Assembly (NCBI GenBank): GCA_025558095.1
Contig: JAIVFI010000014.1
Location: 186,001-250,000, forward strand
Direction of reading: 5' to 3'
DNA: 64,000 nt
From: Hyaloraphidium curvatum SAG 235-1
Taxonomy: Eukaryota; Fungi; Monoblepharomycota
The notes below the pieces were generated by a model, which was not told the DNA's origin, made no database searches, and saw only the letters and a list, made by a program, of their open reading frames with translations. The translations under genes were made by a program, and so were the position numbers. Below, piece after piece: positions 9,862 through 31,195 of this stretch (within the stretch, counting starts at the first letter, position 1; every line of letters starts with the position of its first letter).

Positions 9862-11257
9862 ATGCCCGCGCCGTTCCCAACCGCAGGGCTCCGCGCCCTG
9901 GCCACCGCGGCCTGCGCCGCCCTGGTGGCGTCGGCGGCCGCGCTCCCGACTGGCGAGCAGGACGCCCCGGCCGTCCTGTTCCGACGGTCCTGCCGCGAGT
10001 GTCCCGAGGATTTCATGTGCGAGTTCGGGTACCCCGATGCCCCGGAGGGGTTGCAGGCCTGCGTGGGGTACAGCGAGTCCCTGGAGCACCTCTACCGCCG
10101 CTACGGCGGCGCCGCGGAGGTCGGTGTGGGCGCGCACATGATCCCTGCTTCGCGTCTTGACCGCACTTTGCTTCCAGAGGCAGGCGACCGCCTCCGCCCG
10201 GACGGAGGGGACCAGCTCCACGACCTCGCAGGCGACGCAGACCGGCTCGACGACCAGCTTGTCCGCGACGAGCTCGACCGCTTCGAATTCGCAGACGACG
10301 AGCACCAGGGCCACAACCAGCACCGGGCCGTCCACCAGCACCGGGCCCACAACCACGAAGCCGGTGCGATCCATTTCGCCGCCCGCTTCCGTCGCGCTGG
10401 AGCCTGATTCGATTCCCATCAGACGGTGACGCTCAGCTTCTTGAGCCTCGCTGCCGGGACTTCGGTGTCGACGTCGTTCAACAGCCACGTGGCGTCCAAG
10501 ACGATCGGAATCCACAACGCGGGCTCGTAGCCGGTCACCATCACGGCCGTACAGGTCGAGGGAAGTGGAACGACCAGCGCCTCGTGGACCTATTCCGAGA
10601 TGGCTCCGAGCATCATCGCCGCCGGGCAGACGGCCGACCTCGTGGTGTACGTCACGCACACGGGTACCAGTGCCAACAGGGGAACGGCCACCAACACGTT
10701 CACGGTGTTTGCCACCGCGACGGGGGCGATCGTGACGCCGAGCGCCAAGACCATCAAGGCCACGGGCGTCGTCTCGAAAAGGGTGTGTGCCGAAGCGAGG
10801 CCGGGTCGTGGTGCGGGGCGAGTTCTAAAGGCCCACCTTGCAGGGAGCAACGCTGAGCGTTTTCGGCGTCGCCCAGTCTGGCACTTTCGCAACATCTGTA
10901 CCGACGGTTTCCGCCACTCGGGCGCTCAGGGTGACCAACATTGGCAATGCCCCGCTGACGATCAGCACCGTCTCCGTCGCGGGAAATGCGGACGACGCCC
11001 CGGCCTCCTGGAGCTGCGGCCCGCTCGACACCACGGTCCTCGTCTCCGCCGCCGACGCCACGATGACGTGCACCACGACCGCCGTCAGCCTGGGCAAACC
11101 GTCGGCCACCGCCACGGTTTCGATCCTTGCAGACGGGGAGCCTACGGACGCGCCGGTGGTCTCGAAGACGTACGTCGTCACGCCGATCGCAGCTGTCCGA
11201 TGCGGACGTAACGTTGAGGAAAGCGTCGCGCCGAAGGACGAAATCGGGCATGTGTGA
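9862..11257 (+). pseudogene. Secreted Ser/Thr-rich protein with two Ig-like beta repeats; in-frame TAG at 10528-10530
   Basis: Signal-peptide-like MPAPFPTAGLRALATAACAALVASAAA, Cys-rich N-part, S/T stalk and 3 introns. The repeats IHNAGS*PVTITAVQV and VTNIGNAPLTISTVSV align, and the stop interrupts the first. Confidence 0.6.
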
Positions 11258-11742: not shown

Positions 11743-12218
11743 TGCGAAGGTACAGGACGTCTGACATTCGGACAAGGGTATTTTCATTTTCGGTTCGGAG
11801 GCGTGGAGGCGTCGGTCCTCGCGATCGACTCGTGATCGACTCGCGATCGACTCGCGAGTGACTCGCGAGTCACTCGCGAGCGACTCGCGAGCGACTCGCA
11901 AGTGACTCGGCACAGCCACCCTCCTGGGATATATAAAGAGCGGGACATGTAACAGTACAATCTTGATCGCCAGTTGACTCTACGTGCTCTCCGTGTCGTT
12001 CGACCACCGTGCGGAACCCCGCCCGGCCGGATCCTCGTTCTGAGAGCCCTTGGGACGCACCCCGGGAGACATCCCGTAACCTCTTTCCCCCGGCTACAGT
12101 CAAGTATCTTCAGCGCTGTTCGCTTATTCATATTCAGGGCCTATCCGACCCGAAGAGCCGAGCGGGATTCGCGCGCCGGGTTAGAGCTTCAGGCCCGGTT
12201 CCGACCCGGACCGTCGCA
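11743..12218 (+). repeat. 5' LTR (476 bp)
   Basis: Direct repeat of 21922-22386 with TG...CA ends and 5-bp terminal inverted repeats; carries one extra 11-bp unit. Confidence 0.97.
11816..11937 (+). promoter_or_regulatory. LTR U3 array of 11-bp (G/C)ACTCGCGA(G/T)(T/C) units followed by TATATAAA
   Basis: About 8 units plus a partial (11816-11910), containing a perfect 30-bp palindrome at 11851-11880. TATA at 11930-11937. Confidence 0.75.
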
Positions 12219-12219
12219 C

Positions 12220-12230
12220 TGGTCCGACCT
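12220..12230 (+). other. Primer-binding site, tRNA-Tyr-like
   Basis: TGGTCCGACCT, 1 nt after the LTR, is complementary to ...AGGUCGGA-CCA. That implies C1:G72 and A73, the eukaryotic tRNA-Tyr identity elements. Confidence 0.65.
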
Positions 12231-12385
12231 CCGTGATCCTGCTCTCGGGTCTTCGACACCTCGTTCGACTTCAGTTTCGACTTCGATAATCCAAAAACAA
12301 CTTCGCCTGGCACCGGCGCTTGTCGACTGCCACTCTTTTCTGTCAACCGTATTCCGTCAACCAAGTTCATTCCCCTTCGCCAAAC

Positions 12386-14041
12386 ATGGACCCCGTTCAA
12401 GAAGCCGCCCCTCAGCAGGAGGTTCAGCAGCCTCAGGAAGCTAACGATTTGCAGAACAACCCGCAGGCCCAGGCGATTATCCAAGCTGCGCAGGCCGCGA
12501 TCCAGCAAGTCGGCGCCGCCGCCAACGACGTCGCCCAACTCGCCGCCCAGCAAGCCGCCCAGCAAGCCGTCGCCGATCAGCTTGCCGCTCAGCTCGTGGC
12601 GCAACAGACCGCTCAGCAGTTGCCAGCTGCCCAAGTTCAACAGCAAGCCGCCGCCGAGCAGCTTGCAGCGCAGCAGCTCCAGCAGCTCGCCGCACAGCAG
12701 CAGGGTCAGCGGAGCGAGCAAGCCCCGGCTGTCAACGCTGCCGCCGCTGGTCTCCAGCCGCAGCAGTTCGTCGACGCCGTACGGGCCATCGTTGGCGCTC
12801 AGCCGCCGAACGATGGAAGCACCGGCCTCCCCCAGGCGGATCGCCAGGGCGGAGCCGCCAAGCTCCCGGCTCAGCTGCTGCCTGCTTCTGTTCAGCCCTT
12901 CGATCCCGCTACGCAGGACCCGGAAGACTTCTTCCGCGACCTCACTACGGTTCTCACGGCGTTCGGCTCCATCAACAACCTCGTCAAGGTCTTCCCGGTC
13001 TTCCTTGGGCCTCTGCCGCGCGCAATGTGGCACAACATCACGCCGCAGAACCGCCCTCCGGACTATCCCGCGACGGCCACCTATCCTCCGGTGACCCAGA
13101 ACGATGTGCTTGCCTGGCTACGCTACCACTTCGAGCCCCGCGACGCATCGATGCATTATCGCCGGCACTACAACACGATTCAGATGACCAACGATGAGAC
13201 CCTCGACGCCTTCGTTGCCCGCGTATCCCTGGCCGAGACGCGTTTCCTCTCGCACTGCGGCGATCAGCTTCCTACCAGGGAAGTGCAAGACAGCGTGTAC
13301 GGCCAGAACCTGCTCTACGGACTGCGCCCGGAGCTACGCGGGAAGGCGCTGGAGCTCCTCGGGGATCACCTCATCAACCGCACTTCCGTCACCAAGGTCA
13401 TCGAGAAGATGCGCACCGTCATGCAAGCATCGGGCCCTGCGCAGCCGCGCGACATCCGTTTCCTGGGCCAGAACTCGATTTCGGAGATTCCGGCTCTGGT
13501 CGGCCAGCACTCGTCTTCGGGCTCCTCCAAGGCGACCGACAAGGCGACGACGGAAGTGCTGCTGGCTCATACGCAGGCTCTCACAAAGCTGCTGGAGCCT
13601 AAGGGAGAGCGCAGGCCCACCGGTGGACCGCCGGGGGAGTCTGCGTTCCGGCCTCCGCGCCGTTTCGTCCCCTTCCAGTCTCGTCGGAGCCAGCCGTTGC
13701 CGCCTTCGGGGCCGAACAGCGACCTCGTCGAGATCAAGGAGCTCATCACCAAGCTGCTGCCGTCGCCTCGCCATCAGGTTCAGGCCGCGGAGACCAGGTC
13801 GAACCCCCCCGCGAGGCCTCCTCCGATCGATCGGCCCCGCCAGCAGCAGGAGCGCCAGGATCGCCGGCCCTTCACCTCGGAGTACCGCGACCAGAAGCGC
13901 TTCCAGCCTCGCCACTGCCATCTCTGTGGCATGGATGGGCATGCTCAGGACGAGTGCTGGGAGTTGGAGAAGAATGCCAACCGCCGCCCACTCAACTGGA
14001 AGTCTCGCCTCGGCAACACCCCTTCGATGCCAAAAAACTAG
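12386..14041 (+). CDS. gag: Gag (Q/A-rich N-terminus, retrotransposon capsid, CCHC knuckle)
   Basis: IQMTNDETLDAFVARV (MHR-like), LLYGLRPELR, CHLCGMDGHAQDEC. Confidence 0.93.
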   Translation: MDPVQEAAPQQEVQQPQEANDLQNNPQAQAIIQAAQAAIQQVGAAANDVAQLAAQQAAQQAVADQLAAQLVAQQTAQQLPAAQVQQQAAAEQLAAQQLQQLAAQQQGQRSEQAPAVNAAAAGLQPQQFVDAVRAIVGAQPPNDGSTGLPQADRQGGAAKLPAQLLPASVQPFDPATQDPEDFFRDLTTVLTAFGSINNLVKVFPVFLGPLPRAMWHNITPQNRPPDYPATATYPPVTQNDVLAWLRYHFEPRDASMHYRRHYNTIQMTNDETLDAFVARVSLAETRFLSHCGDQLPTREVQDSVYGQNLLYGLRPELRGKALELLGDHLINRTSVTKVIEKMRTVMQASGPAQPRDIRFLGQNSISEIPALVGQHSSSGSSKATDKATTEVLLAHTQALTKLLEPKGERRPTGGPPGESAFRPPRRFVPFQSRRSQPLPPSGPNSDLVEIKELITKLLPSPRHQVQAAETRSNPPARPPPIDRPRQQQERQDRRPFTSEYRDQKRFQPRHCHLCGMDGHAQDECWELEKNANRRPLNWKSRLGNTPSMPKN

Positions 14042-14080
14042 CTTTGCCCTCAGTGCCGCACGGCCATAGGGGGGCAGAGA
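14032..14080 (+). other. -1 ribosomal frameshift signal (A AAA AAC plus downstream stem-loop)
   Basis: Heptamer 14032-14038 sits immediately before the gag TAG; the -1 frame is pol (KKLALPS). CTTTGCCCTC can pair with GGGGGCAGAG. Confidence 0.85.
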
Positions 14081-17000
14081 TCCAAGCTCTTGAACCACAT
14101 GTGGAACCTCTTCCTGGAACTTCCCCGCTGCCGGACGGCACGGACCCTTCATCTCCTGGCGGATCGCCGGAGTTGTCGGATTCCGCGACCGATGAACCGA
14201 CGGCGGAGGACCACGTTCATCATTGGCCCTTCGGGGGCACGGAGTACATCCTCTTCCTCGAGGCGGAGGCAGCTCGACAGGCCGCCGTTCGTCAGCAGCG
14301 GGAGGCGCTCATGCCGATCGACGAGACCCTGGCCCCGCCGCCGGCAGCGGATTCGGCGTCGCCCGGCTCGGTCGAGGTCGTGGGAAACGGTGAACCGGCG
14401 GCACAGGATGCGGACGCGGGATCAGCGGATGCACCTATGCACGAGGGCCCGACCGTCCGCGCCGTTCCCGGACCTTTCGAAAGGCCCCCTCCTCCTTCCG
14501 CCTACGCACGACCACCGCTGCCTGGCCCTCGGCCTCGCCCGCGGCCACCTGCTCCGGTCGCCCCTCCGCCGGATCGCTGGACGTGGACTTCGCAAGTGCA
14601 GTTCCACTATCAGGCGGCACGCGTTTCGGCATGGGTCAACGGCGTGAATACCCCCGCGGCCCTCGTCGACTCCGGTGCCTCAGTGGTGGCGGTTCGGTCG
14701 TCCTTCTTCTGCCGGATCCACCCGTCGCCACCGATCAAACCATGGACACTCGGCACCCTCAGCACGGCCGCGGCCGGCGGAACCATGTGGGTCCGCGGAG
14801 TTGCTAAGATGGACATCCTGGTCGGGAATCAACACTGCGTCATGGACGTCGCCATCATGGACGGTCTCATGGACGACGTGATCCTCGGCACCCCTTGGCT
14901 CTCCGCCCTACGCGTTCAGATGGACTGGGAGACGCCGGTCCTCTATTTCAAGGACGATCCGGAGGGGGTCGTCGTGCCAATGCACATTGTTGCGCGACCG
15001 CTCTTCGGATCACACCTGGTCGCCCCGCTCCATTCAACCACCTCCATCACGGTCTACCCCAACGAGGACGTCTCGATCACCGCTGAGCTGGCCCCGACGA
15101 CTCCCTTGGCGACCGTCGTGGAGATGGACTTGACAGGGGTCATCGAGACGCCGAACACTTCGCCGTTCGATCGCCTCTTCATCATCCCGTCGGCGACGCC
15201 CGACAGAGACGGTCGGCTGCCGATTCTCATCCGCAACTACGGGACGACACCGGTCACGATCGGCCCGGGCACCCACCTCGGCCGCTTCCGCGTGCGGATT
15301 CCTGGATTTCTCGCTCCGGAACCGCCCACGTATCTGGCTCCCGCGCAGATCTCGATGCTGGAGCCCGAGCTGCCCCACACCGAACCGGCCGAATCCACGC
15401 TCACGGTCGAGGAGACCATCGATCTGTTCGCGGTGCCCTCGCCGGGATCGATTGGACCACCTCAGCCTCCCGGCGTGGAGCCTCCTCCGGTCGAGGCTAT
15501 CGAGCTCAAGATGGACCAAACGATCCTGAGCGAGGGGGACAAACCTCGTTTCCATAAGCTCTGCGACCGCTACCGGGACGTGTTTGGTCCTTGGATCGGC
15601 AAGCTGCGCAACCATCGCTTCCGGATCGACACGGGCGACCTCAAGCCGATCCACCAGATGCCGTACCGGACCCCGTTCCGGCTTCGCGGGGAAATGGACA
15701 AGATCATCGACGACCTGCTCGTGCAGGGCGTAGTCGTCCCCTCGCGAAGCCCCTGGGCCACGCCCTGCATCATGGTGCCAAAAGGGCACGGCTCGGGCGA
15801 ATGGCGCCTGGTGATCGATTACCGGAAGCTCAACGCCGCCACCAAGCGCGACGTCTACCCGATGAAGAACCCAAGCGACACTCTCGCTCTCCTCAGCGCG
15901 GCCAAGGTGTGGAGCGTTTGCGACATCCGCTCCGGCTTTTGGCACGTGGAGGTGGCCGACGAGGACAAGGAAAAGACGGCCTTCACGACGCACCGCGGTC
16001 TCTACCAGTGGGAGCGGATGGCCATGGGCTTTACCAACGCTCCTGCAACCTTTGCTCGGATCATGGACGAGCTCCTCGCCGGCCTCCAGTGGTACTGCTT
16101 GGTGGTCTTCATCGACGACATCATTATCTTCTCGCAGACGGTCGACGAGCACCTCGTGCACCTGGAGCTCCTCTTTGACCGACTGCGCGAGGCCGGGATG
16201 ACTCTGAAGCTGGCCAAATGCAAGTTCTTCCGCCGCGAGGTCAAATACCTCGGGCATTACGTCACCGCCGACGGCCTCAAGGTCGACCCCGAGAAGACCC
16301 GCGCGGTGGACCAGTTCCCCCGCCCAACGACCAAGAAGGAGCTCCAATCGTTTCTCGGCCTCTCCAACTACTATCGCCCCTTCATTGCCGGCTACGCCAA
16401 CATTGCCAGCCCGCTCACCCGCCTGACGCAGGACGGCGTCTCGGTCTCTCGGGCCTGGGACGACGCATGCGAGGCCGCCTTCCGTATGCTAAAGGAACGG
16501 CTTACGTCGGCGCCCGTGCTCCGTCGCCCCGACTTTTCCAAGCGCTTCGTCTTGTTCACGGATGCCAGCGATATCGGCCTCGGCGCGGTGCTCAGCCAGC
16601 GGGACTCCGATGGCAAGGAGTACGTCATCGCCTACGCCAGCCGCGCTCTGCAGCCGAACGAGCGCAAGTGGGACACTCGGGAGCGCGAAGCCCTGGCCGT
16701 TGTTTGGGCATGCGAGCATTTCCGGGCGTATTTGATCGGGGACGAGTTTGAGGTGGTCACCGACCATAGCGCCCTCAAATGGCTCTTGGAGACCTCCAAG
16801 CCGGGCCGCCTACAGCGCTGGATCCTCCGGCTCTCGGACTTCAGGTTCCAGATCATCCATCGCTCGGGCAAAGCGAACTCCAACGCCGACTTCCTGTCTC
16901 GTCAGCTCGTGGCGCCGTCGCCCGACGAGGACGTGCCTATGGGCGACCCCGAGGAAATCTTGGACATCCCTGCCTTTTGGCCCCCAAACCCTCCCGACCC

Positions 17001-19089
17001 CTTGCCTTTTTCTTCTTTTTCTGGGGGGGGACGGGCGCCCGGATTCCTCTCCGGGAGTGATCTCGGTCAGACTTCCCGTTCTTCGTCAACCCCAGTCACC
17101 GAGTCAGACTCGGGACGAGCTACTGCGGGTTCCTCAGTCAATTGTGAATCAATGGAGCGAGTGCTGTCTGGCACGGAGTTCCCGGCCACGGTTGCCGCAG
17201 TGGAGGGAACCCTGTGGAGCGATCCGGGGACCCTGCCCGAGGCTGCGGCACCGGAGACGCAGATCCTCCTGCCGATCCCAACGACGAACGCACAGGTCGA
17301 CCCGGCAGACGTGCCTGAGCGAGACCTGGCGTTCCTTCATCCGGCACTGCTTGAGGTGCTACCCGATGTCGGGGGCATCAGTGCTATTGACCTTGCCGAC
17401 GTCAGATCCCGGGATGCCCTGCGCAAAGTGCAAGAAGCCGACGTCGAGACCAGCGCGCTGATCCGCTTCGTGCGAGACGGGGAGCTCCCTCCCAACGTGA
17501 ATCTGGCCAAATTCTGCAAGAAGTACGGCGAGCAGTACTTCCTCGCTACGGACGGCGTGCTCTGCCGGCGCGATGTACTCGCGACTGGTACCCGTCGTAT
17601 CCCGGTCACCCAGCTCGTGATACCGCACGAGCTGAGGGAGGCCTACCTGCAACGTGCGCACGACGATCCCCTGAGCGGGCACGTCGGGCGACACCGGGCG
17701 TACAGCAATCTGCGGCGCCGCGTATATTGGGTCGGCATGGCGCACGACGTTCGCCGCTGGACGCGAGCCTGCCTTACATGCATGACCCGGAAGATGCCTT
17801 CGGTATCGAACCAGGGCTTACTGAAATCGGTTCCTCTCACTGGTCCCAACGAGGACATCTACATCGACTACATCGGCGAGATCAATCCGGCCACGCCCCG
17901 CGGCAACAAGTACCTTCTCGTCGTCTACGATCCGTTCACTAAATGGGTCGCGGCGTATCCGACTCCGGACCTCTCTGGGCCGACGACGGCGAAGCTGCTC
18001 TATACGCGATGGATTCTCGAGCACGGTCTTCCGAAGCGGATTCACCACGACAACGCCTCGAACCTGGACAACCATTACATGGAGTACCTGCTCAAGCTAC
18101 TCGGCATCAACCGGGGCCTGGTCACGGTTGGGCATCCCAGGGCTTCCCTCGCGGAGCGCCCGAACCGGTGGATCATCGACGCCCTGAGCGCAGCGGTCTC
18201 CAAGAACTACCAGACATGGGACGAGGACATCGTGGGGGTCATCTTTGCCTTCCGGACCTCCATCCACGCGACGACCGGCGAAACTCCGTTCTTTCTGATG
18301 CATGGTCGGGATGCTCGTATTCCGCTCGACCTACTTTACGACGAGACCGAGATTCGCGAGCCAGTGCACCTGCGGGCCAGCGACGAGGAGGACAAGAAGA
18401 CAGAGGATGAGCGCCGGCGGACCTACGTCGTGGAGCTCGTGGCGCAGCTTCGTGCGGCCTACGACCTGGTGGCCGAGAAGATGGCCGCAGCGGCGGAGAC
18501 TCGGAACGCCAAGGCCAACGCTACCCGGCTTCCGATTACCTTCCGCCCCGGCGACCTCGTGCTCATCTGGGGACCAGAACGACCGCGCAAGGGCGAGCCG
18601 GGCAAGTTCGTCTCTCGTTATCTTGGGCCCTACCGCATCGAGGAGTCAGGCCACACCGAGCTCACCTGGAAGTGTAGACACGTCTACGAGACCGACCACG
18701 TCACCACTGTGCATGTGGACCGGCTGGCGCGCTACAAGCCTTGGGAGTCGGCCACCTTCAACGCGCGCTCGTGGAACGCACGCGCCCCGGAGCTCGCCGC
18801 CGGTGAAGAGCTCGATCTCTCGGAACCGGTGAACGAGTTCGAAGAGGAAATCGAGGTCGAGAACGCGCTTGGGAACGAGCAGGAGTACACCGTCGAGGAC
18901 ATCGTCGGCCACGAGGGCCAGGGTCACGGACTCAAGTTCGAGGTCAAGTGGCGGGGCTTCGCTCGCACGACCAAGCTCCCTCTGGACATGTTGCACGGCG
19001 CCATAGGGATCGTCCGCGCCTATGCCGATCGCGTTGGTCTCCAGCTCCCGACGGGTCTCCCCAGGCGCATGCGGACTCGGCGTCGCTAG
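14038..19089 (+). CDS. pol: Pol polyprotein: protease, dUTPase-like spacer, RT, RNase H, integrase, GPY/F, chromodomain
   Basis: ALVDSGAS; VFIDDII; FTDASDIGLGAVL/REALAV/TDH; H...H...CLTC; IDYIG/HHDN/AERPNR; LGPYRI; YTVEDIVGH...FEVKWRGF. No internal stops. Confidence 0.97.
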   Translation, partial: LALPSVPHGHRGAEIQALEPHVEPLPGTSPLPDGTDPSSPGGSPELSDSATDEPTAEDHVHHWPFGGTEYILFLEAEAARQAAVRQQREALMPIDETLAPPPAADSASPGSVEVVGNGEPAAQDADAGSADAPMHEGPTVRAVPGPFERPPPPSAYARPPLPGPRPRPRPPAPVAPPPDRWTWTSQVQFHYQAARVSAWVNGVNTPAALVDSGASVVAVRSSFFCRIHPSPPIKPWTLGTLSTAAAGGTMWVRGVAKMDILVGNQHCVMDVAIMDGLMDDVILGTPWLSALRVQMDWETPVLYFKDDPEGVVVPMHIVARPLFGSHLVAPLHSTTSITVYPNEDVSITAELAPTTPLATVVEMDLTGVIETPNTSPFDRLFIIPSATPDRDGRLPILIRNYGTTPVTIGPGTHLGRFRVRIPGFLAPEPPTYLAPAQISMLEPELPHTEPAESTLTVEETIDLFAVPSPGSIGPPQPPGVEPPPVEAIELKMDQTILSEGDKPRFHKLCDRYRDVFGPWIGKLRNHRFRIDTGDLKPIHQMPYRTPFRLRGEMDKIIDDLLVQGVVVPSRSPWATPCIMVPKGHGSGEWRLVIDYRKLNAATKRDVYPMKNPSDTLALLSAAKVWSVCDIRSGFWHVEVADEDKEKTAFTTHRGLYQWERMAMGFTNAPATFARIMDELLAGLQWYCLVVFIDDIIIFSQTVDEHLVHLELLFDRLREAGMTLKLAKCKFFRREVKYLGHYVTADGLKVDPEKTRAVDQFPRPTTKKELQSFLGLSNYYRPFIAGYANIASPLTRLTQDGVSVSRAWDDACEAAFRMLKERLTSAPVLRRPDFSKRFVLFTDASDIGLGAVLSQRDSDGKEYVIAYASRALQPNERKWDTREREALAVVWACEHFRAYLIGDEFEVVTDHSALKWLLETSKPGRLQRWILRLSDFRFQIIHRSGKANSNADFLSRQLVAPSPDEDVPMGDPEEILDIPAFWPPNPPDPLPFSSFSGGGRAPGFLSGSDLGQTSRSSSTPVTESDSGRATAGSSVNCESMERVLSGTEFPATVAAVEGTLWSDPGTLPEAAAPETQILLPIPTTNAQVDPADVPERDLAFLHPALLEVLPDVGGISAIDLADVRSRDALRKVQEADVETSALIRFVRDGELPPNVNLAKFCKKYGEQYFLATDGVLCRRDVLATGTRRIPVTQLVIPHELREAYLQRAHDDPLSGHVGRHRAYSNLRRRVYWVGMAHDVRRWTRACLTCMTRKMPSVSNQGLLKSVPLTGPNEDIYIDYIGEINPATPRGNKYLLVVYDPFTKWVAAYPTPDLSGPTTAKLLYTRWILEHGLPKRIHHDNASNLDNHYMEYLLKLLGINRGLVTVGHPRASLAERPNRWIIDALSAAVSKNYQTWDEDIVGVIFAFRTSIHATTGETPFFLMHGRDARIPLDLLYDETEIREPVHLRASDEEDKKTEDERRRTYVVELVAQLRAAYDLVAEKMAAAAETRNAKANATRLPITFRPGDLVLIWGPERPRKGEPGKFVSRYLGPYRIEESGHTELTWKCRHVYETDHVTTVHVDRLARYKPWESATFNARSWNARAPELAAGEELDLSEPVNEFEEEIEVENALGNEQEYTVEDIVGHEGQGHGLKFEVKWRGFARTTKLPLDMLHGAIGIVRAYADRVGLQLPTGLPRRMRTRRR
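17011..17033 (+). other. Putative central polypurine tract
   Basis: TCTTCTTTTTCT-G8-ACG resembles the 3' PPT context CCTTCTTTTGGGTGGGGGCG and lies ~40 nt from the element midpoint (17064). Confidence 0.55.
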
Positions 19090-19159
19090 TAACACCAACG
19101 ACGTCTATCCGGTCACAGCACTACCATCTCTGTGCTCCGATCCCCGGCTTTTCACTGAC

Positions 19160-20145
19160 TCAAACCCGACGTACTACCTCGAGCCTATCCTCGACCCCCT
19201 CGAACGCCAACTTGTGATACCCGGACTGAAAATGCGTGTTCAGATTGCCCAGGAGGCCCTTAGCCTTGTGCTTTACCAGATGGCACCACGGGAACGAGCA
19301 TACCGCCACTTCGCCCTTGGTGGGGCTCCGGTACAGTTCGCCGGCGTACGTTCCGGCAATCTTCCATCGGAGGAAGGAGCCTGCCGGCACGGCATCAGGG
19401 ACCTTCTTCGTCACCCGTTCCGCCTTCAAGCCCCAGACCGGCGACGACTTCTTCATCTGGCACATTCAGTGACGATCAGCGCTTGTGGGGCGTACTCCCG
19501 TCGAGCCGTTCACCTGCGCAATCTGCTCCCGGGCCTCCCCGCGCTGCACCACATGCCCCTCGTCTTTACCTGAAGTTGCCGTTTGGGCCGTCTGGAAGGC
19601 GCTCCCTTGTTCAGTGGCGGCCTCGAAGTCGCCTAAGTGGTCCAGCTCCCAAGAGGGCGCATGAAGCGTGACTGACAGCACGGGGACTTCGTCGGCCGCC
19701 TCGAGCTCCTCCCTCGAGTCCGCCGCCGACTCGCCCTCGCCGACGGAAGGCGCACCCTTCGACGACATCGCCGGCAGGAAGACGCCGGAGGTCCGGGTTG
19801 CGGCCGCGGCCGCGATCGGGTCGTTGCCTCTGGCCCCGCCAGCCTCGCGCAGCTTGGCGGTCCCGCCGGCCTCGCGCAGCTCGGCGACGAGCCGACGGAG
19901 CACTCGGACCTCGACAACGACGTTCCCAGCCTCTTCGGCCAGCGGCAACATCCCGCGCATGGCGGCCAGACGCACCAGTTGCAGGAAGCAGTCGACCACG
20001 TCGTCCTCCTGGCGCGGCGCTGAGCTCCCGTTCGAGGACCACGCCGCTACGCTCTTACCTTGGTGCACAGCAGGACGTCGAAGGTCGGCAACCGAACCTC
20101 GAACCACGAACTCGGCGGGACGACGTTCGGCAGCTCCGCACTCAT
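19160..20145 (-). CDS. Spliced antisense accessory gene of the retrotransposon, ~292 aa, C-terminal C2H2-like zinc finger
   Basis: Exons 20145-20059, 20008-19514 and 19456-19160 join in phase 0 through introns GTAAGA..CAG (50 nt) and GTGAAC..GCTGAT..CAG (57 nt). Finger: CSFPWC-x14-NTHFQSGYH. Confidence 0.7.
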
Positions 20146-20284
20146 GACAGGCGCGGAGATCCCCCCAGCTCTTCTGGACCCTACGTCGCGATCCCCCGCG
20201 AGCGCTTTCGTCGACGCAATGGCGTACGGCCCTCGCTCGCGCCCCGTCCCCCGTGGCGGGGACTGGTGACCCGGTGTGCGGGCG

Positions 20285-20445
20285 AACTCGCGGTCGACTC
20301 GACTCGCAGTTGACTCGCGGTTGACTCGCGGTTGGCTCGCGGTTGACTCGCAAGTGACTCGCGAGTCACTCGCGAGTCGCTCGCAAGTCACTCGCGAGCG
20401 ACTTGCGATGCACTCGCGAGTTGCCTGCGCTTCGCACCATATAAG
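20285..20445. promoter_or_regulatory. Internal copy of the 11-bp repeat array plus TATAAG; putative bidirectional promoter
   Basis: About 12 units (GACTCGCGGTT, GACTCGCGAGT, CACTCGCGAGT...) at 20285-20421, with palindrome GTGACTCGCGAGTCAC at 20354-20369. TATAAG at 20440-20445, about the same spacing from the array as in the LTR. Confidence 0.7.
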
Positions 20446-20513
20446 CGGCGGACCACAGGAGGCCGCGGCCGCGGACTACGCACCCAACGTCGACCTCGCC
20501 GCTACCGTCTCCC

Positions 20514-21779
20514 ATGGCGACCCCCACGACTGCCGGCCACAACCTGCGGCCCCGCCGGCCGCATGTGGCCACGGCGCCGCCGCCGGCGACTGCGCCCGTC
20601 GCTGCGTTGCCTGGCGTCGTACCCCCGGACTATCGGTCGGCGCTTGCCTCCCTCTCGACCCGGCTGGACGACCTCCGGGCCGACCTCGACGTCAGACACT
20701 CCCAGACGACGGCCCACTTGCACAAGGTCGAGCAGGCCGCCTTCTCCGCGGTCATGCCCATCCGCGCAGCCCTCGACGCACTCCACCCGGTGCTCAACAC
20801 CCTCGTCAATGTCGGCAACCTGGAGCAGCACGCTCTTGACCGCGTAACGGCGACGCTCGAGCAGCAAGAGGCCCGCCTGGACGCCCAGATCCGCCAGCAG
20901 CGTGACGAGCTCCAGGTGGTCCTCAGTGGCCGCCACCGCGAACTTGAGTTCGCCGTCACCGCCTTGCGCCGGACCGACGACGCTCGTCTCGGTGCCATCG
21001 AGACGCAGCTCGACCGGCTTGCGTTGGTGCTCGAGGCTCAACGTCAGAACTTCAACGGCATTCTCCTGGTGGACGAAGCTACCATCGAGGAGTTGAGGGA
21101 GTTCGGCTCTTCCCTCGCCGGGCTGGTTGCTCAGACCGGGACCAACCTCGAAACCACCATCGAGACCGTCGTCGAGACCAATCTCGCCCGTCACAACAAT
21201 GGCCCCATGGCGGAGTTTGCGGCCGACCTCAAGAGCGTCCTGGCGGCCCATCTGCAGCGATTTGGGTCGGAGCAGCACAAGCAGCTCATGCTTTCAGCTC
21301 AAGACCACACCACGCTCCTCACGGCCGGCCTGAACGCGCAGCGCGAGCACTTCACCAAGACCGCCGACGAGCAACGGGCCCTCCTGCGTCGCTTCCTCGG
21401 CAATCAAGTGGCTCCCCTGGCGGGGCAAACGACGCCCGCCGTGGTCACCTCCACGCCGGTCGGCCGCGTCAAGGACGAGGACCTCGTCACCTCCGACGAT
21501 GAGGCTGGGGATATGCAACCTCCAGCTCCTCGCCCCGAGAGCGTGTCCAGCAGCGACGCCTCCTCCATCGTCTCGCAGGACGACGGCCTCTTGGCCGCCC
21601 TGTACGACGACATCCCGGCCGCTCCCTACAAGTCGACCATGCCCCCGGTCTACACCCCCTCGGCCGCGGACGGCTCAGCCGTGCATGCCGCCTTCGCTCT
21701 CGGCTTTACCCGCCGGCTCCGCGCCCCGCCGCCGAGCGACGACGAGGCGGACGCCGACGTCGACTTTGAGGACGCCTAA
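20514..21779 (+). CDS. Intronless 421-aa coiled-coil accessory ORF in the env position
   Basis: ATG-initiated ORF with strong GC3 bias, heptad-rich core (LSTRLDDLRADLD...LEQQEARLDAQIRQQRDELQ) and acidic tail; no signal peptide or TM seen. Confidence 0.8.
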   Translation: MATPTTAGHNLRPRRPHVATAPPPATAPVAALPGVVPPDYRSALASLSTRLDDLRADLDVRHSQTTAHLHKVEQAAFSAVMPIRAALDALHPVLNTLVNVGNLEQHALDRVTATLEQQEARLDAQIRQQRDELQVVLSGRHRELEFAVTALRRTDDARLGAIETQLDRLALVLEAQRQNFNGILLVDEATIEELREFGSSLAGLVAQTGTNLETTIETVVETNLARHNNGPMAEFAADLKSVLAAHLQRFGSEQHKQLMLSAQDHTTLLTAGLNAQREHFTKTADEQRALLRRFLGNQVAPLAGQTTPAVVTSTPVGRVKDEDLVTSDDEAGDMQPPAPRPESVSSSDASSIVSQDDGLLAALYDDIPAAPYKSTMPPVYTPSAADGSAVHAAFALGFTRRLRAPPPSDDEADADVDFEDA

Positions 21780-21910
21780 GCCACCCTTCGGCCCTACACT
21801 CTCCAACATCTGTTGTCTCCACCTCGGCCTTCAACATCTTCTACTGCAAGCATGACGTCACTCCGCGGAGGATCTTCGATTTCGTGGCGCCGAGGGCGGC
21901 GCCTTCTTTT

Positions 21911-21921
21911 GGGTGGGGGCG
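21911..21921 (+). other. 3' polypurine tract
   Basis: GGGTGGGGGCG preceded by a T-run, abutting the 3' LTR. Confidence 0.8.
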
Positions 21922-22386
21922 TGCGAAGGTACAGGACGTCTGACATTCGGACAAGGGTATTTTCATTTTCGGTTCGGAGGCGTGGAGGCGTCGGTCCTCG
22001 CGATCGACTCGTGATCGACTCGCGATCGACTCGCGAGTGACTCGCGAGTCACTCGCGAGCGACTCGCAAGTGACTCGGCACAGCCACCCTCCTGGGATAT
22101 ATAAAGAGCGGGACATGTAACAGTACAATCTTGATCGCCAGTTGACTCTACGTGCTCTCCGTGTCGTTCGACCACCGTGCGGAACCCCGCCCGGCCGGAT
22201 CCTCGTTCTGAGAGCCCTTGGGACGCACCCCGGGAGACATCCCGTAACCTCTTTCCCCCGGCTACAGTCAAGTATCTTCAGCGCTGTTCGCTTATTCATA
22301 TTCAGGGCCTATCCGACCCGAAGAGCCGAGCGGGATTCGCGCGCCGGGTTAGAGCTTCAGGCCCGGTTCCGACCCGGACCGTCGCA
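21922..22386 (+). repeat. 3' LTR (465 bp)
   Basis: Identical by eye to the 5' LTR except for one fewer 11-bp unit. Confidence 0.97.
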
Positions 22387-25606: not shown

Positions 25607-26179
25607 ATGACGCGGTGCATGTTCGGCCCCGTCTGGATCGAGGACCCGCACCACCCGGTCATCCAAGCGCTCAGACAGCAGGACCGAGCGCTCGTCCTCG
25701 AGGTTGAGACGGAGGGCCAGCTGGCTCAGGCGGTCGCGTTCCTCGGAAAGGCGAAGCGGGACGAGCTCGGCGCCGAGGGCAGCGCGAACCCCGGCGCCGG
25801 GAGGGGCGCCGCCAAGCCCGTCCTGAAGGCGCTGTCGGCCGCCATGGAACTGATCGGATCGAGGCTCGACAAGGTCAAGGACTTCCGCGACCAAGCCGAG
25901 GCGGCGTGCAAGCTCATCCGCCGCGCGGCCGGGGGCGGGGAGCCGACCGAGCTCGAGCTCGGGCTCGCTGCGCTGCCCGCCGTCGTCGACAGGATCACGG
26001 CCGGCATGCCGCCCTCCACCGATCCGTGGCACGCGTTCGCGGTGAAGCACTTCGGTCCGATCGTGCTGGGAGAGCTCGAAACGGCGAAGGAGCGCAAGGA
26101 ATGGAGGTTGGACGATGCGACGGAGAGAGGTTGGGGCAGGGTGCGAGAGAAGCTTGCAGGGATGGGGCACATGGTCTGA
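25607..26179 (+). CDS. Hypothetical helical protein
   Basis: 190-aa ORF with coding-like GC3 bias; no recognisable motif; start uncertain. Confidence 0.5.
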   Translation: MTRCMFGPVWIEDPHHPVIQALRQQDRALVLEVETEGQLAQAVAFLGKAKRDELGAEGSANPGAGRGAAKPVLKALSAAMELIGSRLDKVKDFRDQAEAACKLIRRAAGGGEPTELELGLAALPAVVDRITAGMPPSTDPWHAFAVKHFGPIVLGELETAKERKEWRLDDATERGWGRVREKLAGMGHMV

Positions 26180-27915: not shown

Positions 27916-28151
27916 TGTGACTGCAACCACGGAGGAGAAACAGACGAGCTTGTATTGGATGCCGGAACCGCGGCGGCGGGAGTAACATGGCGAAGATGGG
28001 AATGCCACTCACTGTAAATATTCAAATTGAGCTGTTTATCTCTTGATTTGCAGCCTTCTGCTCCAAGAACGGCGGGATCGGGAGGCGTCGAGTAGTGTTG
28101 GCCGGTGTCGCGGGGCCGCGGTCTCACCTGCGCGACGAACCGTTTCCGAAC

Positions 28152-31000
28152 ATGGCCTCCCCGCCGCCCGCCGGGGGCGGCGGCAAGGGCAAGGGCCGGC
28201 GACGCGTGTCGGAGGCGGCGCCGCCCGACCCGGAGGTTTTGGAGGAGCCTGCGGCGGCGGAGGTGCACGGGGGGGACGGCGAGCACGCGCAGCACGACCC
28301 GTTTCACGGCCCGTTCGAGGCCGAGTTCGGCGACGGCGAGCTGCTCGGGGTGGGTCGGCCGTTGATACGCCGGAATCTCGCGTCTAACTGGTGTTTAAAC
28401 CTGTGCGTGGGTGTGCGCTCGCGGAACCGCAGGCCGGGGAGGTCCCGCAGCACCTGCGCGCCATGGAGATGCACCAGTTCTACCGCGACCGCGCCGAGTG
28501 GTGGCACGCGCCGGAGCACCAGGAGTTCCTGCACTATGCCGACGCCGAGCGGGAACGGCGGGCGGCCGGCGGCGACCCGGCCGACGCGCTGCCGCAGCCC
28601 GGTCCGCCCGGCCCGCACGCCGTCGTCGCGCAGACGACGCTGTTCCACGGCGCGGGGCCCGCCGCGGACGTCGTCAACCAGGTCACGGCGCGCTACGAGC
28701 TGTACCGCGGCCGCGGGTCGGGCGTGCCGGGGGGCGAGACCGGCCTGGGCGAGCCGTACCCAACCGAGCGCAATCCGGACGTCGAGCGCGAGTGGCTCAT
28801 GCGGAGCTACAATCTCAAGCTCAGGCCGGTGCTGCCGAGGAACGGGTTCGTCGACGTGGAATCGATCAGGAAGCTGCGCTTCATCAGGGGGATGCCCGTG
28901 AAGCCGCCGCGGCCGCCGGCAACGGGGACTTTCGGAACCGGCGCCGTCAGGCCTGTTCTACCTGCCACTGGGACGTTTGGAGCGAGGCCGATCGGCGCAA
29001 GGCCTTTACCCGTCGGTGCAGGACCCGGCGTCGCCCGCCCAGCGGCTCCTGCCGGAGCGCCCGGCACTCCAGCAAACGCTGCGACACCCGGCGCCCCACC
29101 TGCTCGGCCGCCGATCGCACGTCCTCCACTTGCAAGACCGGCGACTCCAGGAGCGATACCCGCGAGGCCCGGCGTGCCCGGACGCCCGCCCGTTCGCGCG
29201 CCTGGCGTCCCCGTAGGCCCACCTGGGCAGCCTGGTGTTCCGTCACGCCCGCCCGGGCAACCTGGGGATCCCGTACGCCCGCCAGGACGACCCGGCGTGC
29301 CAGTTCGCCCCGTTGGACAGCCAGTGCAGCCTGGACAGCCCGGCCGACCGCCTGTGCGCCCCGTTGTCGCCGGCCGCCCGGGCGCACGCCCGCCTGGACC
29401 TCCCGGAGCACTTGGACGCCCGCCTGCCGCGCCTTTGAACCCCGCTGGACGGCCGCCTGGAGTCGTGGCTAGGCCGCCTGGTGCCGTTGGAAGGCCGCCG
29501 CAGGCCGTTGGCAGGCCTCGGCCGCCGCCTGCCGTCAGGCCGATCGGAGAGGACGCGGGCGATGCGGCGCAAGATGTGGACGTGCGGCCCTCGCTCCCGG
29601 GCCCGGTGGTCCAGTTGCCGGCCGACGGTGCGAGGCCGCCGGCCCGACCTCCGCTTGCGCGACCTCCGCTGGGACGGCCGCCTGCTGGGCGTCCGTCCGT
29701 CGCGGGGCGTCCCCCCGTTGCGCGGGCCCCGATGGCTCGTCCTCCGGCGGTGGCTGCCGGCAGTCCTCCGGGAGAGGCTGGTCGCCCGCCCGTGCCCGTT
29801 CCTGGTGCTGCAGCCAGTGCTGCACCTGGTGCTGCACCTGGCCTTGCGCCCGGCGCTGCTGCTGCTCCTGGCGTGGCACCTGCCGCTGCACCGGGGGCAC
29901 CACTGCCAGGGGCACCCGGAGAACCCGCGCCGCCGCCCGGCGTGCGTGTGCTCCCAAAGCCCCGCCTCGGTCGCCCCCCGAAGAACCCTCCCCCTCCAGG
30001 TGTCGAATACGTGCCCCGCCCGCGCCCCATGCCGGTCGTGCGGGGCCCGCCGCGCGCGGCGCCGACCGTGTTCCGGCCGCTCTCCGCCGGGCTGCCGCAG
30101 GACTCGTTCGCCGTCAAGCGCAAGGCGGAGCCCATGGGCACCGTTCCGCTGGGCGGTGCTAAGAGGCCGCGGTTGGACGGGTCGAGCCCGGCGAGGCCGC
30201 CGGCCACTGCTCCCGGTATGCCGAGGCCGCCCGTCGCTGCTCCCGGTGCGCCGCGGCCGCCCGTCGCTGCTCCTGGTGCGCCGAGGCCGCCCGTCAGTGC
30301 TCCTAGTGCACCGAGGCCGACCGTGGCTCCCTCGGCGCCCGCAGCACCTGCATCTGCACCTGCACCTGCAGCTGCCGCAGCTCCCACGGTGAATCATGTG
30401 GCTCCGGCACCTCGCCCTGCCGCGCAACCCGCCGCCCCGGCGCGGCCGCCCGCGGTGCCCACCCCGGCCGCGGCTTCCTCGCCTCCGTCTGCGACCCACG
30501 GCCCCTCCCCCCACGCCGCAGACTGGCGCTTCCGCCTGCGCTTCGGCGAGTTCGTGGAGGTGCTTTTTGACGAGCTCGGCGCCGCGTACCCGTGCCGCGC
30601 GCTGTGGTATGTCCCCGCAGAGCTTGACCCCGATCCCGAGTCGCCCCAGGCTGGCGAGCCGGCGAGCAAGGGCCATTTCCTGGTTGTTCACGCGATCGGC
30701 TGGCCCACCAAGGAGGACGCGTGGGTGTTCCTCGACCGGTACGGCCTCTCGCTCCTGCGCAAGCCGGGCGAGTCGCCCGATCTCGAGCCGATACCCCCGG
30801 ACAAGGCCGAGAAGGAGGCGTACCTGTTCGATTTCACCTCGCCGTCGTACGTCGAGGACGTGCGCGGGGCGACATGGGACGTGAAGCGGTCCGATCTGCC
30901 GAGCCTGCGGGGGGTCTGGGTGCGGCCCGGGTGGGACAGGGCGGTGGGGAGGCGCAAGTTCGTCAGCGGCAGGCAGAGGGGCAGGATCAGGCCGCTGTAG
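28152..31000 (+). CDS. Pro/Ala/Arg-rich protein with AT-hook-like motif and C-terminal Tudor-knot/chromo-barrel-like domain
   Basis: Intron at ~28350-28432. KPRLGRPPK; FGEFVEV...AYPCRAL...VVHAIGWPTKEDAWV resembles HYxGWxxxxDEWV. PRPPVAAPGA repeats at ~30220-30330. Confidence 0.7.
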
Positions 31001-31195
31001 CCGCCGATGAGGCAGATTTGGATATTCGATTCCACGACACACGAGGTCCGCGCCTTTTGGGGCTCGCGAGATCGCGCGCTTTTCCGCCCGGCCGCGCCGT
31101 CCAAGTTCAACCGCTCTCGTTCGGCCCCCCGGGCCACCAATCCCGGGCAGCGCCCCCTCCACGGGTGCAATTGCGCCCGGCGCTCGCCTGCCACC

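What the first reader, a model, noticed from the sequence alone, without database searches (positions are those of the whole stretch)
19160..20145. Intron-containing antisense gene inside a retroelement
Three ORF-track fragments join exactly in phase 0 through two host-sized introns (20009-20058, 19457-19513), giving ~292 aa ending in CSFPWC...NTHFQSGYH. Introns can survive reverse transcription only if they are not spliced from the genomic RNA, which the antisense orientation guarantees. The gene converges on the pol stop with a 70-nt gap and could also supply antisense RNA. It may be a captured host gene or an element-evolved one.
Basis: partly seen in the sequence, partly recalled or inferred. 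Interest (0 to 1): 0.8.

Follow-up and report, generated by a model that had tools for sequence, protein, structure and literature searches.

The report
Spliced antisense gene in fungal retrotransposon
A young Ty3/gypsy retrotransposon of the water fungus Hyaloraphidium curvatum carries, on the strand opposite gag-pol, a three-exon gene for a small protein with a zinc-finger-like motif. A diverged sister element keeps the same exon-intron layout, so the gene is real, and it is a new variant of the known "antisense accessory ORF" of LTR retrotransposons.

Summary
Exons 20145-20059, 20008-19514 and 19456-19160 (minus strand) join in phase 0 across GT-AG introns of 50 and 57 nt. The product is 292 aa, and its stop lies 70 nt from the pol stop.

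The window is Hyaloraphidium curvatum contig JAIVFI010000014.1. The gene sits in an intact 10.6-kb Ty3/gypsy element (11743-22386) that is unannotated here.

Being able to join ORFs is weak evidence in 65% GC DNA. Three stronger lines support the gene:
- Codon-usage scoring recovers all three exons to within 15 nt.
- A search of 1.84 billion proteins with exon 3 found one real relative, an annotated 274-aa H. curvatum protein (E 3.8e-11).
- That relative lies in a sister element with the same antisense, three-exon layout. Intron 2 is at the homologous residue, both introns hold in-frame stops, and the four Cys/His residues are conserved.

The two elements share gag-pol (91-96% nt). From the pol stop through U3 their DNA does not align. 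Each cassette has its own repeat motif, present in both U3 and an internal promoter.

No transcript data could be examined and the function is inferred. The closest known kind is the antisense additional ORF of Grande, Retand and Boty.

The parts
11743..12218 (+). 5' LTR (476 bp, TG..CA). The U3 region holds an 11-nt phased array of the palindrome ACTCGCGAGT at 11818-11909, then a TATA box near 11930; the 4-bp target-site duplication is GTTC.
12386..14041 (+). gag (551 aa from the first ATG), Gln/Ala-rich at the N-terminus, with a CCHC zinc knuckle near the C-terminus. No Pfam hit.
13954..19089 (+). pol ORF (1711 codons) with protease, RT, RNase H, integrase zinc-binding domain and integrase core. 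It overlaps the end of gag in another frame.
19160..19456 (-). Exon 3 of the antisense gene (98 aa plus stop). It holds the conserved C-x4-C-x16-H-x5-H motif at 19300-19214.
19457..19513 (-). Intron 2: 57 nt, GTGAAC...GCTGAT...CAG, phase 0, with an in-frame TGA at 19468-19466. Its position is conserved in the L005 paralogue (51 nt there).
19514..20008 (-). Exon 2 (165 aa): a conserved N-terminal segment and an amphipathic helix (V-x-E-x3-LRR-x-V-x-ELR), then an acidic, low-complexity linker.
20009..20058 (-). Intron 1: 50 nt, GTAAGA...GCTCAG...CAG, phase 0. It holds the stop that ends the exon-1 frame at 20049-20047.
20059..20145 (-). Exon 1 (29 aa). Its ATG at 20145 is the first ATG downstream of the repeat array on this strand. 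This is the least supported exon, with no detectable similarity to the paralogue's exon 1.
20146..20513 (.). Spacer between the antisense gene and ORF421, proposed as an internal, possibly bidirectional, promoter. It holds an 11-nt phased ACTCGCGAGT-type array at 20286-20421 like the one in U3, and a TATA-like TATAAG at 20440-20445, 69 nt before the ORF421 ATG.
20514..21779 (+). ORF421, a sense-strand accessory ORF (421 aa). It is identical to an NCBI hypothetical protein annotated on other copies, has a counterpart in the sister element (32% aa identity), and has a conserved C-terminal block that includes a PPxY motif.
21922..22386 (+). 3' LTR (465 bp), identical to the 5' LTR except for one 11-nt repeat unit. 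A purine-rich tract at 21908-21921 precedes it.

Best explanation
The feature is a real protein-coding accessory gene of a young, apparently intact Ty3/gypsy LTR retrotransposon of Hyaloraphidium curvatum. It is transcribed from the strand opposite gag-pol. Transcription most likely starts in the 368-bp spacer that it shares, head to head, with a second, sense-strand accessory gene (ORF421).

Two short phase-0 spliceosomal introns are removed from its pre-mRNA. The product is about 292 aa, with an N-terminal amphipathic helix, an acidic linker and a C-terminal domain carrying a conserved Cys2-His2 motif. The introns persist through retrotransposition because the genomic RNA is the complementary strand, where they read CT..AC and are not splice substrates (inferred).

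The gene belongs to a cassette made of the antisense gene, the internal promoter, the sense ORF and the U3 repeats. This cassette exists in at least two deeply diverged versions attached to nearly identical gag-pol. It is therefore an old, selectively maintained module, not a one-off capture.

Most likely function (inferred, about 0.3): a nucleic-acid-binding regulator of the element's own expression. It could bind the cassette-specific repeats that occur both in U3 and in the internal promoter, in the way retroviral accessory regulators act.
For: Shown:
- The element anatomy and its pol domains.
- Exon frames carry host-like codon usage, while the introns and upstream DNA do not.
- Exon 3 finds a single real relative among 1.84 billion representative proteins: P0040, H. 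curvatum, E 3.8e-11. Pairwise BLASTP gives 2e-19 with 43% identity.
- P0040 lies antisense between pol and the LTR of a sister element. Its partner ORF is divergent from it, and it converges on the pol stop.
- P0040 has three exons, and its exon 2/3 junction is at the homologous residue.
- All four introns contain in-frame stops. The GT, GCTGA-type branch site and AG are kept while the intron interiors do not align.
- The residues just after the window's intron-1 acceptor (DDVVDCFLQLV) have a counterpart (GDAVDAFLGLL) starting at an AG in L005. No in-frame ATG lies upstream of it in the window, so exon 1 plus splicing is needed to translate it.
- Cys53, Cys58, His75 and His81 are invariant.
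- gag-pol is 91-96% identical in DNA, but the cassette is unalignable from the base after the pol stop.
- Each cassette has its own repeat in both U3 and the internal spacer. ACTCGCGAGT occurs 16 times against 3.2 expected in the window and is absent from the L005 cassette. ACGGCGTCGM occurs 9 times against 0.35 expected in L005 and is absent from the window cassette.
- Inferred host introns are 47-67 nt, and one has a GTGAAC donor like intron 2.
Against: - No RNA evidence of any kind was available, so the transcription start, splicing and polyadenylation are all inferred.
- The window copy is not annotated in GenBank.
- The annotated intron model of P0040 may be ab initio. Another model in the same annotation (P0039) is a chimera with an invented intron at a rearrangement. 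Its intron 1 (90 nt) also differs from the 54-nt version that homology favours.
- Intron 2 is in frame in both elements and exon 3 begins with ATG in both, so a two-cistron reading is not excluded.
- Intron 1 has no canonical CTRAY branch site, and the intron 2 donor lacks G at +5.
- Exon 1 shows no similarity between the paralogues.
- The zinc-finger reading rests on four residues. Pfam finds nothing even at E 10, PDB sequence searches find nothing significant, and the AlphaFold model is unreliable (pLDDT 45).
- Only two independent versions of the gene are known. Other copies are near-identical or deleted, so no dN/dS test was possible.
Confidence: 0.7

Rival explanations
1. The minus strand codes for protein but is not spliced. 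The exon-2 ORF (from ATG 19960 to TGA 19466) and the exon-3 ORF (ATG 19465 or 19456) are separate cistrons, and 'exon 1 plus intron 1' is 5' leader.
For: Intron 2 is a multiple of 3 and in frame in both elements (57 and 51 nt). Exon 3 starts with ATG exactly at the acceptor in both. In the window the stop and an ATG abut (TGAATG). A Met inside exon 2 is conserved.
Against: The stretch between the 'donor' and the stop is not conserved at all (15 against 11 codons, sharing only the first Val), while GT, the GCTGAT branch site and CAG are conserved. The conserved residues upstream of the internal Met have no in-frame ATG without exon 1. Bicistronic mRNAs are unusual in fungi (established knowledge). 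The annotators' model of the paralogue is spliced.
Confidence: 0.12
2. There is no gene: the ORFs are chance open frames in GC-rich spacer DNA and the GT-AG joins are coincidental.
For: At 65% GC, long ORFs occur in all frames here. Alternative GT-AG joins are plentiful. The antisense 'shadow' of gag reaches a similar codon score (50 bits). There is no Pfam family and the window copy is unannotated.
Against: There is significant protein-level similarity to a paralogue whose DNA is otherwise unalignable. The exon-intron layout is the same and the four Cys/His residues are invariant. Nucleotide differences are lowest at codon position 2 (0.38, against 0.54 and 0.58). The minus-strand frame outscores the plus-strand frames.
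Confidence: 0.03
3. The gene is a host gene captured by transduction, in antisense orientation with its introns, and is a passenger with no role for the element.
For: The presence of introns shows that the gene's own spliced mRNA was not the template for its inherited copies. Transduction of host sequences by LTR elements is documented (PMC7264820).
Against: No host-locus relative was found. Both known copies lie inside elements at the same position with the same partner ORF and promoter design. The two versions are far more diverged than their gag-pol yet both remain open, which points to long residence and selection within elements. Word, profile and metagenome searches outside H. curvatum found nothing. 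An ancient capture cannot be excluded.
Confidence: 0.1
4. The main product is a regulatory antisense RNA that overlaps the 3' end of the genomic RNA, acting through dsRNA or transcriptional interference, and the coding capacity is secondary.
For: The gene converges on pol with only 70 nt between the stops, so its 3' UTR probably overlaps pol. Antisense transcripts regulate Ty1 and other elements (PMC12786077, PMC7264820).
Against: Protein-level conservation across versions whose DNA does not align, together with invariant Cys/His residues, indicates selection on the protein. The two roles are not exclusive.
Confidence: 0.05

Closest known systems
Antisense additional ORFs between pol and the 3' LTR ('aORF-3R') of plant Ty3/gypsy elements: maize Grande gene23, rice RIRE2, Silene Retand, Phaseolus PvRetro13 (PMC7264820, PMC11963269)
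   Same: The position (between pol and the 3' LTR) and the antisense orientation match. These ORFs have their own promoter (shown for Grande), are orphans or poorly characterised, and are suspected to be nuclear or DNA-binding regulators. Tandem repeats lie in the same region. Conservation across family members suggests a role in the element's life cycle.
   Different: The host is an early-diverging fungus rather than a plant. There is no TRP28 (PF04195) or SMC domain. This gene has two conserved spliceosomal introns; the 2020 review never uses the word 'intron' and only calls for a search for spliced antisense transcripts. The gene is paired head to head with a sense accessory ORF across a promoter that copies the U3 repeats.
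brtn, the antisense gene of Boty-like Ty3/gypsy elements of Botrytis cinerea (Zhao et al. 2011, cited in PMC8365987 and PMC7264820)
   Same: A fungal Ty3/gypsy element with an extra antisense gene downstream of pol, often missing from genome annotations.
   Different: No brtn sequence was available to compare. The exhaustive search with exon 3 found no Botrytis protein, so homology is unlikely but remains untested. The hosts are an ascomycete and a monoblepharidomycete.
HBZ of HTLV-1 and other retroviral antisense accessory genes (as discussed in PMC7264820)
   Same: An antisense-strand, spliced accessory gene at the 3' end of a retroelement, encoding a small nucleic-acid- or transcription-related regulator. 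From my own knowledge, the main HBZ mRNA is spliced.
   Different: There is no sequence relation. HBZ is driven from the 3' LTR, whereas here an internal U3-like promoter is proposed. This element has no env and is not a virus of animals.
C2H2 and BED-type zinc fingers
   Same: The pattern is Cys-x4-Cys-x16-His-x5-His, with aromatic residues before and between the cysteines. The low-confidence model places a beta-hairpin and then a helix around the ligands. The best PDB sequence hit, not significant, is a Krueppel-like factor finger (E 0.42).
   Different: No zinc-finger Pfam family matches even at E 10. The spacing is longer than classical C2H2 (x12). Neither the fold nor metal binding is established.

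Membership tests
Ty3/gypsy (Metaviridae) LTR retrotransposon - the host element | Direct LTRs ending TG..CA, flanked by a short target-site duplication | tested here: met
   The LTRs are 11743-12218 and 21922-22386 and differ only by one 11-nt unit. The flanking duplication is GTTC.
Ty3/gypsy (Metaviridae) LTR retrotransposon - the host element | pol domain order protease, RT, RNase H, integrase | tested here: met
   Pfam hits: Asp_protease_2 at 224-315, RVT_1 at 609-769, RT_RNaseH at 860-963, Integrase_H2C2 at 1223-1281 and rve at 1297-1395.
Antisense additional ORF between pol and the 3' LTR (aORF-3R; PMC7264820) | An ORF between pol and the 3' LTR on the strand opposite gag-pol | tested here: met
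   The gene spans 20145-19160 on the minus strand. pol ends at 19089 and the 3' LTR starts at 21922.
Antisense additional ORF between pol and the 3' LTR (aORF-3R; PMC7264820) | Conserved among copies or family members, rather than present in a single copy | tested here: met
   It is present with the same layout in a sister element carrying a deeply diverged cassette. A partial identical copy lies in L001. It is lost through a 2,033-bp deletion in three tandem copies. Only two independent versions are known.
Antisense additional ORF between pol and the 3' LTR (aORF-3R; PMC7264820) | Transcribed from its own promoter | not testable with these tools
   There is only a candidate promoter, the U3-like repeat array at 20286-20421. 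No expression data were available.
Spliceosomal introns | GT..AG boundaries, host-like length and a branch-site motif | tested here: met
   The introns are 50 and 57 nt. Donors are GTAAGA and GTGAAC, both acceptors are CAG, and the branch candidates are GCTGAT (intron 2) and GCTCAG (intron 1, non-canonical). Introns inferred in host genes are 47-67 nt, and one has a GTGAAC donor.
Spliceosomal introns | Position conserved in homologues while the intron interior diverges | tested here: met
   Intron 2 lies between the same aligned residues in the window and in P0040. The conserved coding sequence starts right after the intron-1 acceptor in both. Stops lie inside all four introns and the interiors do not align.
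Spliceosomal introns | Removal observed in RNA | not testable with these tools
   No transcriptome was accessible. No protein spanning the window's junctions exists in the protein collections.
Retand-type TRP28 antisense protein (PF04195) | A match to the Transposase_28 domain | tested here: not met
   No Pfam family matches any exon at E up to 10, or P0040 at E up to 0.01.
C2H2 or BED zinc finger | A match to a zinc-finger family profile | tested here: not met
   There is no zf-C2H2 or zf-BED hit at E up to 10. The best PDB sequence hit is KLF5 at E 0.42, not significant, and the profile search found nothing.
C2H2 or BED zinc finger | Four conserved metal ligands on a beta-beta-alpha fold | tested here: inconclusive
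   Cys53, Cys58, His75 and His81 are invariant in the two known sequences. The model shows a hairpin and then a helix, but with pLDDT 45. No fold search was run on it.

The most novel reading that the evidence does not exclude
The cassette may be a self-contained 'activator plus its own binding sites' module. In this reading the antisense zinc-finger-like protein (or its partner ORF421) is a retrotransposon-encoded transcription factor. It would recognise the cassette-specific 11-nt phased repeats found in both U3 and the internal bidirectional promoter. The whole unit (factor genes, internal promoter and U3) would be exchanged by recombination between lineages that share gag-pol, as retroviral transactivator/LTR pairs are. 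The intron-bearing antisense gene would then be a fungal counterpart of retroviral regulatory genes, with cis-trans co-variation visible in a single genome.
Probability: 0.2. Interest if true: 0.8.

Novelty: new variant of a known kind. Interest (0 to 1): 0.6.

Why it matters
Antisense accessory ORFs of LTR retrotransposons are widespread, but none has an established function, and reviews explicitly ask for spliced antisense transcripts to be sought (PMC7264820). This case offers a compact and probably active example in a culturable early-diverging fungus.

It shows comparative evidence for two retained spliceosomal introns. These can only persist because the gene lies opposite to the RNA that is reverse-transcribed.

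It also offers a natural experiment. Two versions of the accessory cassette sit on almost identical gag-pol, and each has its own promoter repeats in U3 and in an internal promoter. That makes the hypothesis 'the accessory protein recognises its own element's repeats' directly testable by binding and reporter assays.

It also shows that repeat masking hides such genes: the window copy is unannotated, while its paralogue is filed as a hypothetical host protein.

Tried and rejected
- Pfam on every exon, gag, ORF421 and P0040 found nothing for the accessory proteins.
- PDB sequence and profile searches found nothing significant.
- Word-index protein searches with exon 3, and with exon 2 taken as a region of the uninterrupted 295-codon ORF so that 162-516-aa proteins were eligible, both came back empty.
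- A pol search found only relatives at 35% identity or less, so it did not lead to sister copies.
- A metagenome scan with the exon-3 alignment found no relatives.
- Rfam on the whole element found nothing. The bacterial promoter/terminator scan was uninformative.
- AlphaFold on the exon-3 domain with its two-sequence alignment gave pLDDT 45, so I ran no fold search on it.
- MAFFT alignments of the spacers and of intron 2 between the two elements are meaningless at this divergence. I use them only as evidence that the DNA does not align.
- The second hit of the exhaustive search, a 1752-aa Paenibacillus DUF5011 repeat protein, is a repetitive-sequence artefact.
- A 10-mer (GGGGGATCTC) shared upstream of both start codons is within chance expectation for spacers of this size, so I dropped it.
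- A strict donor filter failed to reconstruct host gene models. The relaxed, codon-scored reconstruction is an inference, not a verified intron set.
- A dN/dS test was abandoned. Copies are either at least 99.5% identical or saturated.
All searches used single exons or uninterrupted ORFs by reference.
- Nothing in the window is human.

Full report
**Setting**

The window has 60-74% GC. An exact look-up shows that ORF 20514-21779 is identical to an NCBI protein of Hyaloraphidium curvatum. The host ORF 25607-26176 places the window on contig JAIVFI010000014.1 of assembly GCA_025558095.1. H. curvatum is a monoblepharidomycete fungus (my own knowledge). The sequence is not human and not from a virus of animals, people or crops.

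The finding lies inside a complete LTR retrotransposon at 11743-22386.
- The LTRs are 476 and 465 bp, end TG..CA, and differ only by one 11-nt repeat unit. The target-site duplication is GTTC.
- gag (12386-14041) has a CCHC knuckle.
- The 1711-codon pol (13954-19089) has protease, RT, RNase H and integrase, the Ty3/gypsy order.
- Identical LTRs and open gag and pol frames indicate a very recent insertion.
- No gene is annotated anywhere in the part of the element that the look-up covered, window 15607-22386.

**The observation**

- Exon 1 (20145-20059, 29 codons), exon 2 (20008-19514, 165 codons) and exon 3 (19456-19163, 98 codons plus stop) join in phase 0 to 292 aa.
- Intron 1 is 50 nt (GTAAGA...CAG) and contains the stop that closes the exon-1 frame.
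- Intron 2 is 57 nt (GTGAAC...GCTGAT...CAG).
- The stop codon lies 70 nt from the pol stop.

Two cautions apply. Exons 2 and 3 are in the same frame and are separated by one TGA, so that join is almost automatic. In DNA this GC-rich, open GT-AG joins are common: annotated host genes admit tens to thousands of alternative solutions. Joinability is therefore not evidence by itself.

**Evidence that the minus strand codes**

- The three exons show the same codon-position GC pattern as gag and pol (middle, low, high). The introns and upstream DNA do not.
- Codon-usage log-odds, trained on gag, pol and two host ORFs, are +0.33, +0.30 and +0.17 bits per codon for the exons. gag scores 0.31 and pol 0.25. 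The introns and the upstream continuation of either frame are negative.
- Maximal-scoring segments on the minus strand are 20139-20059, 20020-19499 and 19459-19178. These are the three exons to within 15 nt, and the end of exon 1 is recovered exactly.
- The best segment (51.9 bits) exceeds all 1000 dinucleotide shuffles (maximum 23.9). The antisense shadow of gag reaches 50 bits, so composition alone is not proof.

**Relatives**

Pfam, PDB and the word-index searches found nothing for any exon.

The exhaustive phmmer search of 1.84 billion representative proteins with the exon-3 ORF gave one real hit. This is P0040 = KAI9034073.1, 'hypothetical protein DFJ74DRAFT_753412' of H. curvatum, 274 aa, E 3.8e-11. 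Pairwise BLASTP gives 43% identity at E 2e-19. Exon 2 matches weakly through an amphipathic helix (E 0.003) and aligns globally at 31%. A metagenome scan found nothing. In available data the family is confined to this genome.

**The paralogue has the same anatomy**

P0040 is encoded at L005:10001-10966 on contig JAIVFI010000001.1. That locus holds a sister element in the opposite orientation.
- It has an LTR pair, gag, and a pol split into two ORFs with the same domains.
- The P0040 gene is antisense and converges on the pol stop.
- A divergent 378-aa ORF is the counterpart of ORF421 (32% identity).

The annotated P0040 model has three exons, with introns of 90 and 51 nt.

Intron 2 evidence:
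- The exon 2/3 junction falls between residues that align with the window's junction: QIAS|MPSD against QIAQ|MKKS.
- Both introns 2 begin GTGA, carry GCTGAT 15-19 nt before a CAG acceptor, and contain an in-frame TGA.
- They are otherwise unalignable.

Intron 1 evidence:
- The window's exon 2 begins with a block (DDVVDCFLQLV) whose counterpart in L005 (GDAVDAFLGLL) lies inside the annotated 90-nt intron, directly after an AG at 10123.
- A 54-nt version of the L005 intron (GTAAGC...GCTGAC...AAG) therefore matches the window's 50-nt intron better. Both versions are in frame.
- In the window no in-frame ATG precedes this conserved block, so it can only be translated from exon 1 after splicing.

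Other points:
- Exon 1 itself shows no similarity between the two and is the weakest part of the model.
- Cys53, Cys58, His75 and His81 of exon 3 are invariant.
- Nucleotide differences in exon 3 are lowest at codon position 2 (0.38, against 0.54 and 0.58).

A caveat on the annotation: another model in the same genome, P0039, joins an exon from antisense pol to ORF421 across a rearrangement using a 62-nt 'intron'. The annotators' introns may therefore be ab initio. My support for the introns rests on the comparison, not on the annotation.

**Host introns**

- A strict motif search in about 70 kb of non-element DNA gives candidates clustered at 40-69 nt: 9 of 12, against about 3 expected.
- Codon-scored reconstruction of seven annotated host genes gives introns mostly of 47-67 nt. 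Donors are GTRNGT-like, and one is GTGAAC. Branch sites are CTGAC or CTGAT and acceptors CAG or TAG. These are inferred, not verified.
- The introns of the antisense gene fit this range.

**A swapped cassette**

- The two elements are 96% (gag) and 91.5% (pol) identical in DNA up to the pol stop (window 19089 = L005 11048). They are 77-89% identical in the downstream (R-U5) part of the LTR.
- Nothing aligns from the base after the pol stop, through both accessory genes, to the U3 repeats.
- That block is contiguous on the genomic RNA. The simplest reading is recombination between lineages carrying anciently diverged cassettes.
- Both versions keep open exons, splice signals and the Cys/His residues. 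This argues for selection on the protein.

Each cassette has its own repeat motif.
- In the window, the palindrome ACTCGCGAGT (at most 1 mismatch) occurs 16 times against 3.2 expected. Fourteen of these lie in three 11-nt phased arrays: the 5' U3, the internal spacer at 20346-20421 and the 3' U3.
- In L005, ACGGCGTCGA/C occurs 9 times against 0.35 expected, with four in U3 and four in the internal spacer.
- Neither motif occurs in the other cassette.
- In the window the internal array is followed by a TATA-like box 69 nt before the ORF421 start, mirroring the U3 array and its TATA.

The spacer is thus a U3-like internal promoter for the sense ORF. The antisense gene starts on its other side. 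That this promoter works in both directions is inference.

**Mechanism**

Shown: an antisense, intron-interrupted coding region conserved in two cassette versions and paired with a sense ORF and a U3-like repeat array.

Inferred:
- Transcription runs from the internal spacer.
- Both introns are spliced out.
- The introns persist because they are antisense in the genomic RNA.
- The protein's role is regulatory and nucleic-acid-binding. This rests only on the Cys2-His2 pattern, a low-confidence hairpin-then-helix model (pLDDT 45) and the analogy to Grande, Retand and retroviral accessory proteins (PMC7264820, PMC11963269).

**Comparison and novelty**

Antisense ORFs between pol and the 3' LTR are known in plant Tat/Retand-type elements and in Boty of Botrytis (PMC7264820, PMC11963269, PMC8365987). 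This gene works like them, but it is not a member of the TRP28 family or of any zinc-finger Pfam family.

What appears new:
- The fungal lineage.
- The two conserved spliceosomal introns.
- The head-to-head pairing with a sense accessory ORF.
- The cassette-specific repeats shared by U3 and the internal promoter.

I rate it a new variant of a known kind, with interest 0.6.

**Left out**

Noticed in passing
window 20514-21779 (+); L005:8378-9514 (-): ORF421 is a second accessory gene on the sense strand. It is helix-rich with no Pfam family. Its C-terminal block, conserved between the two cassette versions, includes a PPxY motif (PPVYTP / PPTYTP), the kind of late-domain motif that retroviral Gag proteins use to recruit Nedd4-type ligases. 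It is annotated as a hypothetical protein on other copies but not in the window.
   Followed up: partly
window 19090-22100 against L005:7991-11047: gag-pol of the two elements is 91-96% identical in DNA. Everything from the first base after the pol stop to the U3 repeats is unalignable, although the architecture is the same. This looks like a recombinational swap of an 'accessory genes plus U3' cassette.
   Followed up: partly
L002-L004 (contig JAIVFI010000011.1, about 498.8-542.2 kb): Three tandem copies of the element lie at a period of 11,078-11,079 bp. All carry the same 2,033-bp deletion (window 17893-19925), which removes the end of pol and most of the antisense gene. Each also has an LTR interrupted by a 1.16-kb insert holding part of an annotated 200-aa minus-strand gene. 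The pattern suggests segmental duplication, not retrotransposition.
   Followed up: partly
L001:1-3600 (end of contig JAIVFI010000045.1): An inverted fragment of pol and exon 3 (window 17442-19413) abuts a 5'-truncated ORF421. The annotated protein KAI9000422.1 (P0039, 411 aa) is a chimera of antisense-pol codons and ORF421, joined by a predicted 62-nt intron.
   Followed up: partly
L005:17752-20746: The sister element's 5' LTR lacks U3: only 168 bp are repeated. It abuts a 982-aa minus-strand ORF with a reverse-transcriptase domain, which belongs to a different retroelement. The sister element's pol is also split into two ORFs near 12781-12815, so that copy is defective, although both of its accessory genes are open.
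   Followed up: partly
window 14257-14700: About 444 bp in the Pro/Ala-rich N-terminal part of pol are present in the window element but have no counterpart in the sister element.
   Followed up: no
window 35698-37236 (+), 41026-42348 (+), 31196-32468 (+): Host genes flank the element: an ALG6/ALG8-family glycosyltransferase, an F-box protein, and an annotated TRAM/LAG1/CLN8-domain gene at L007:15590-16862, which converts to about window 31196-32468.
   Followed up: no
window 6000-10000, 28000-32000, 46000-48000, 56000-62600: These stretches have 70-74% GC and long overlapping ORFs on both strands, for example 59601-62618 (+) and 59493-62489 (-), each about 1000 codons and without a Pfam match. 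They illustrate how unreliable ORF length is in this genome.
   Followed up: no
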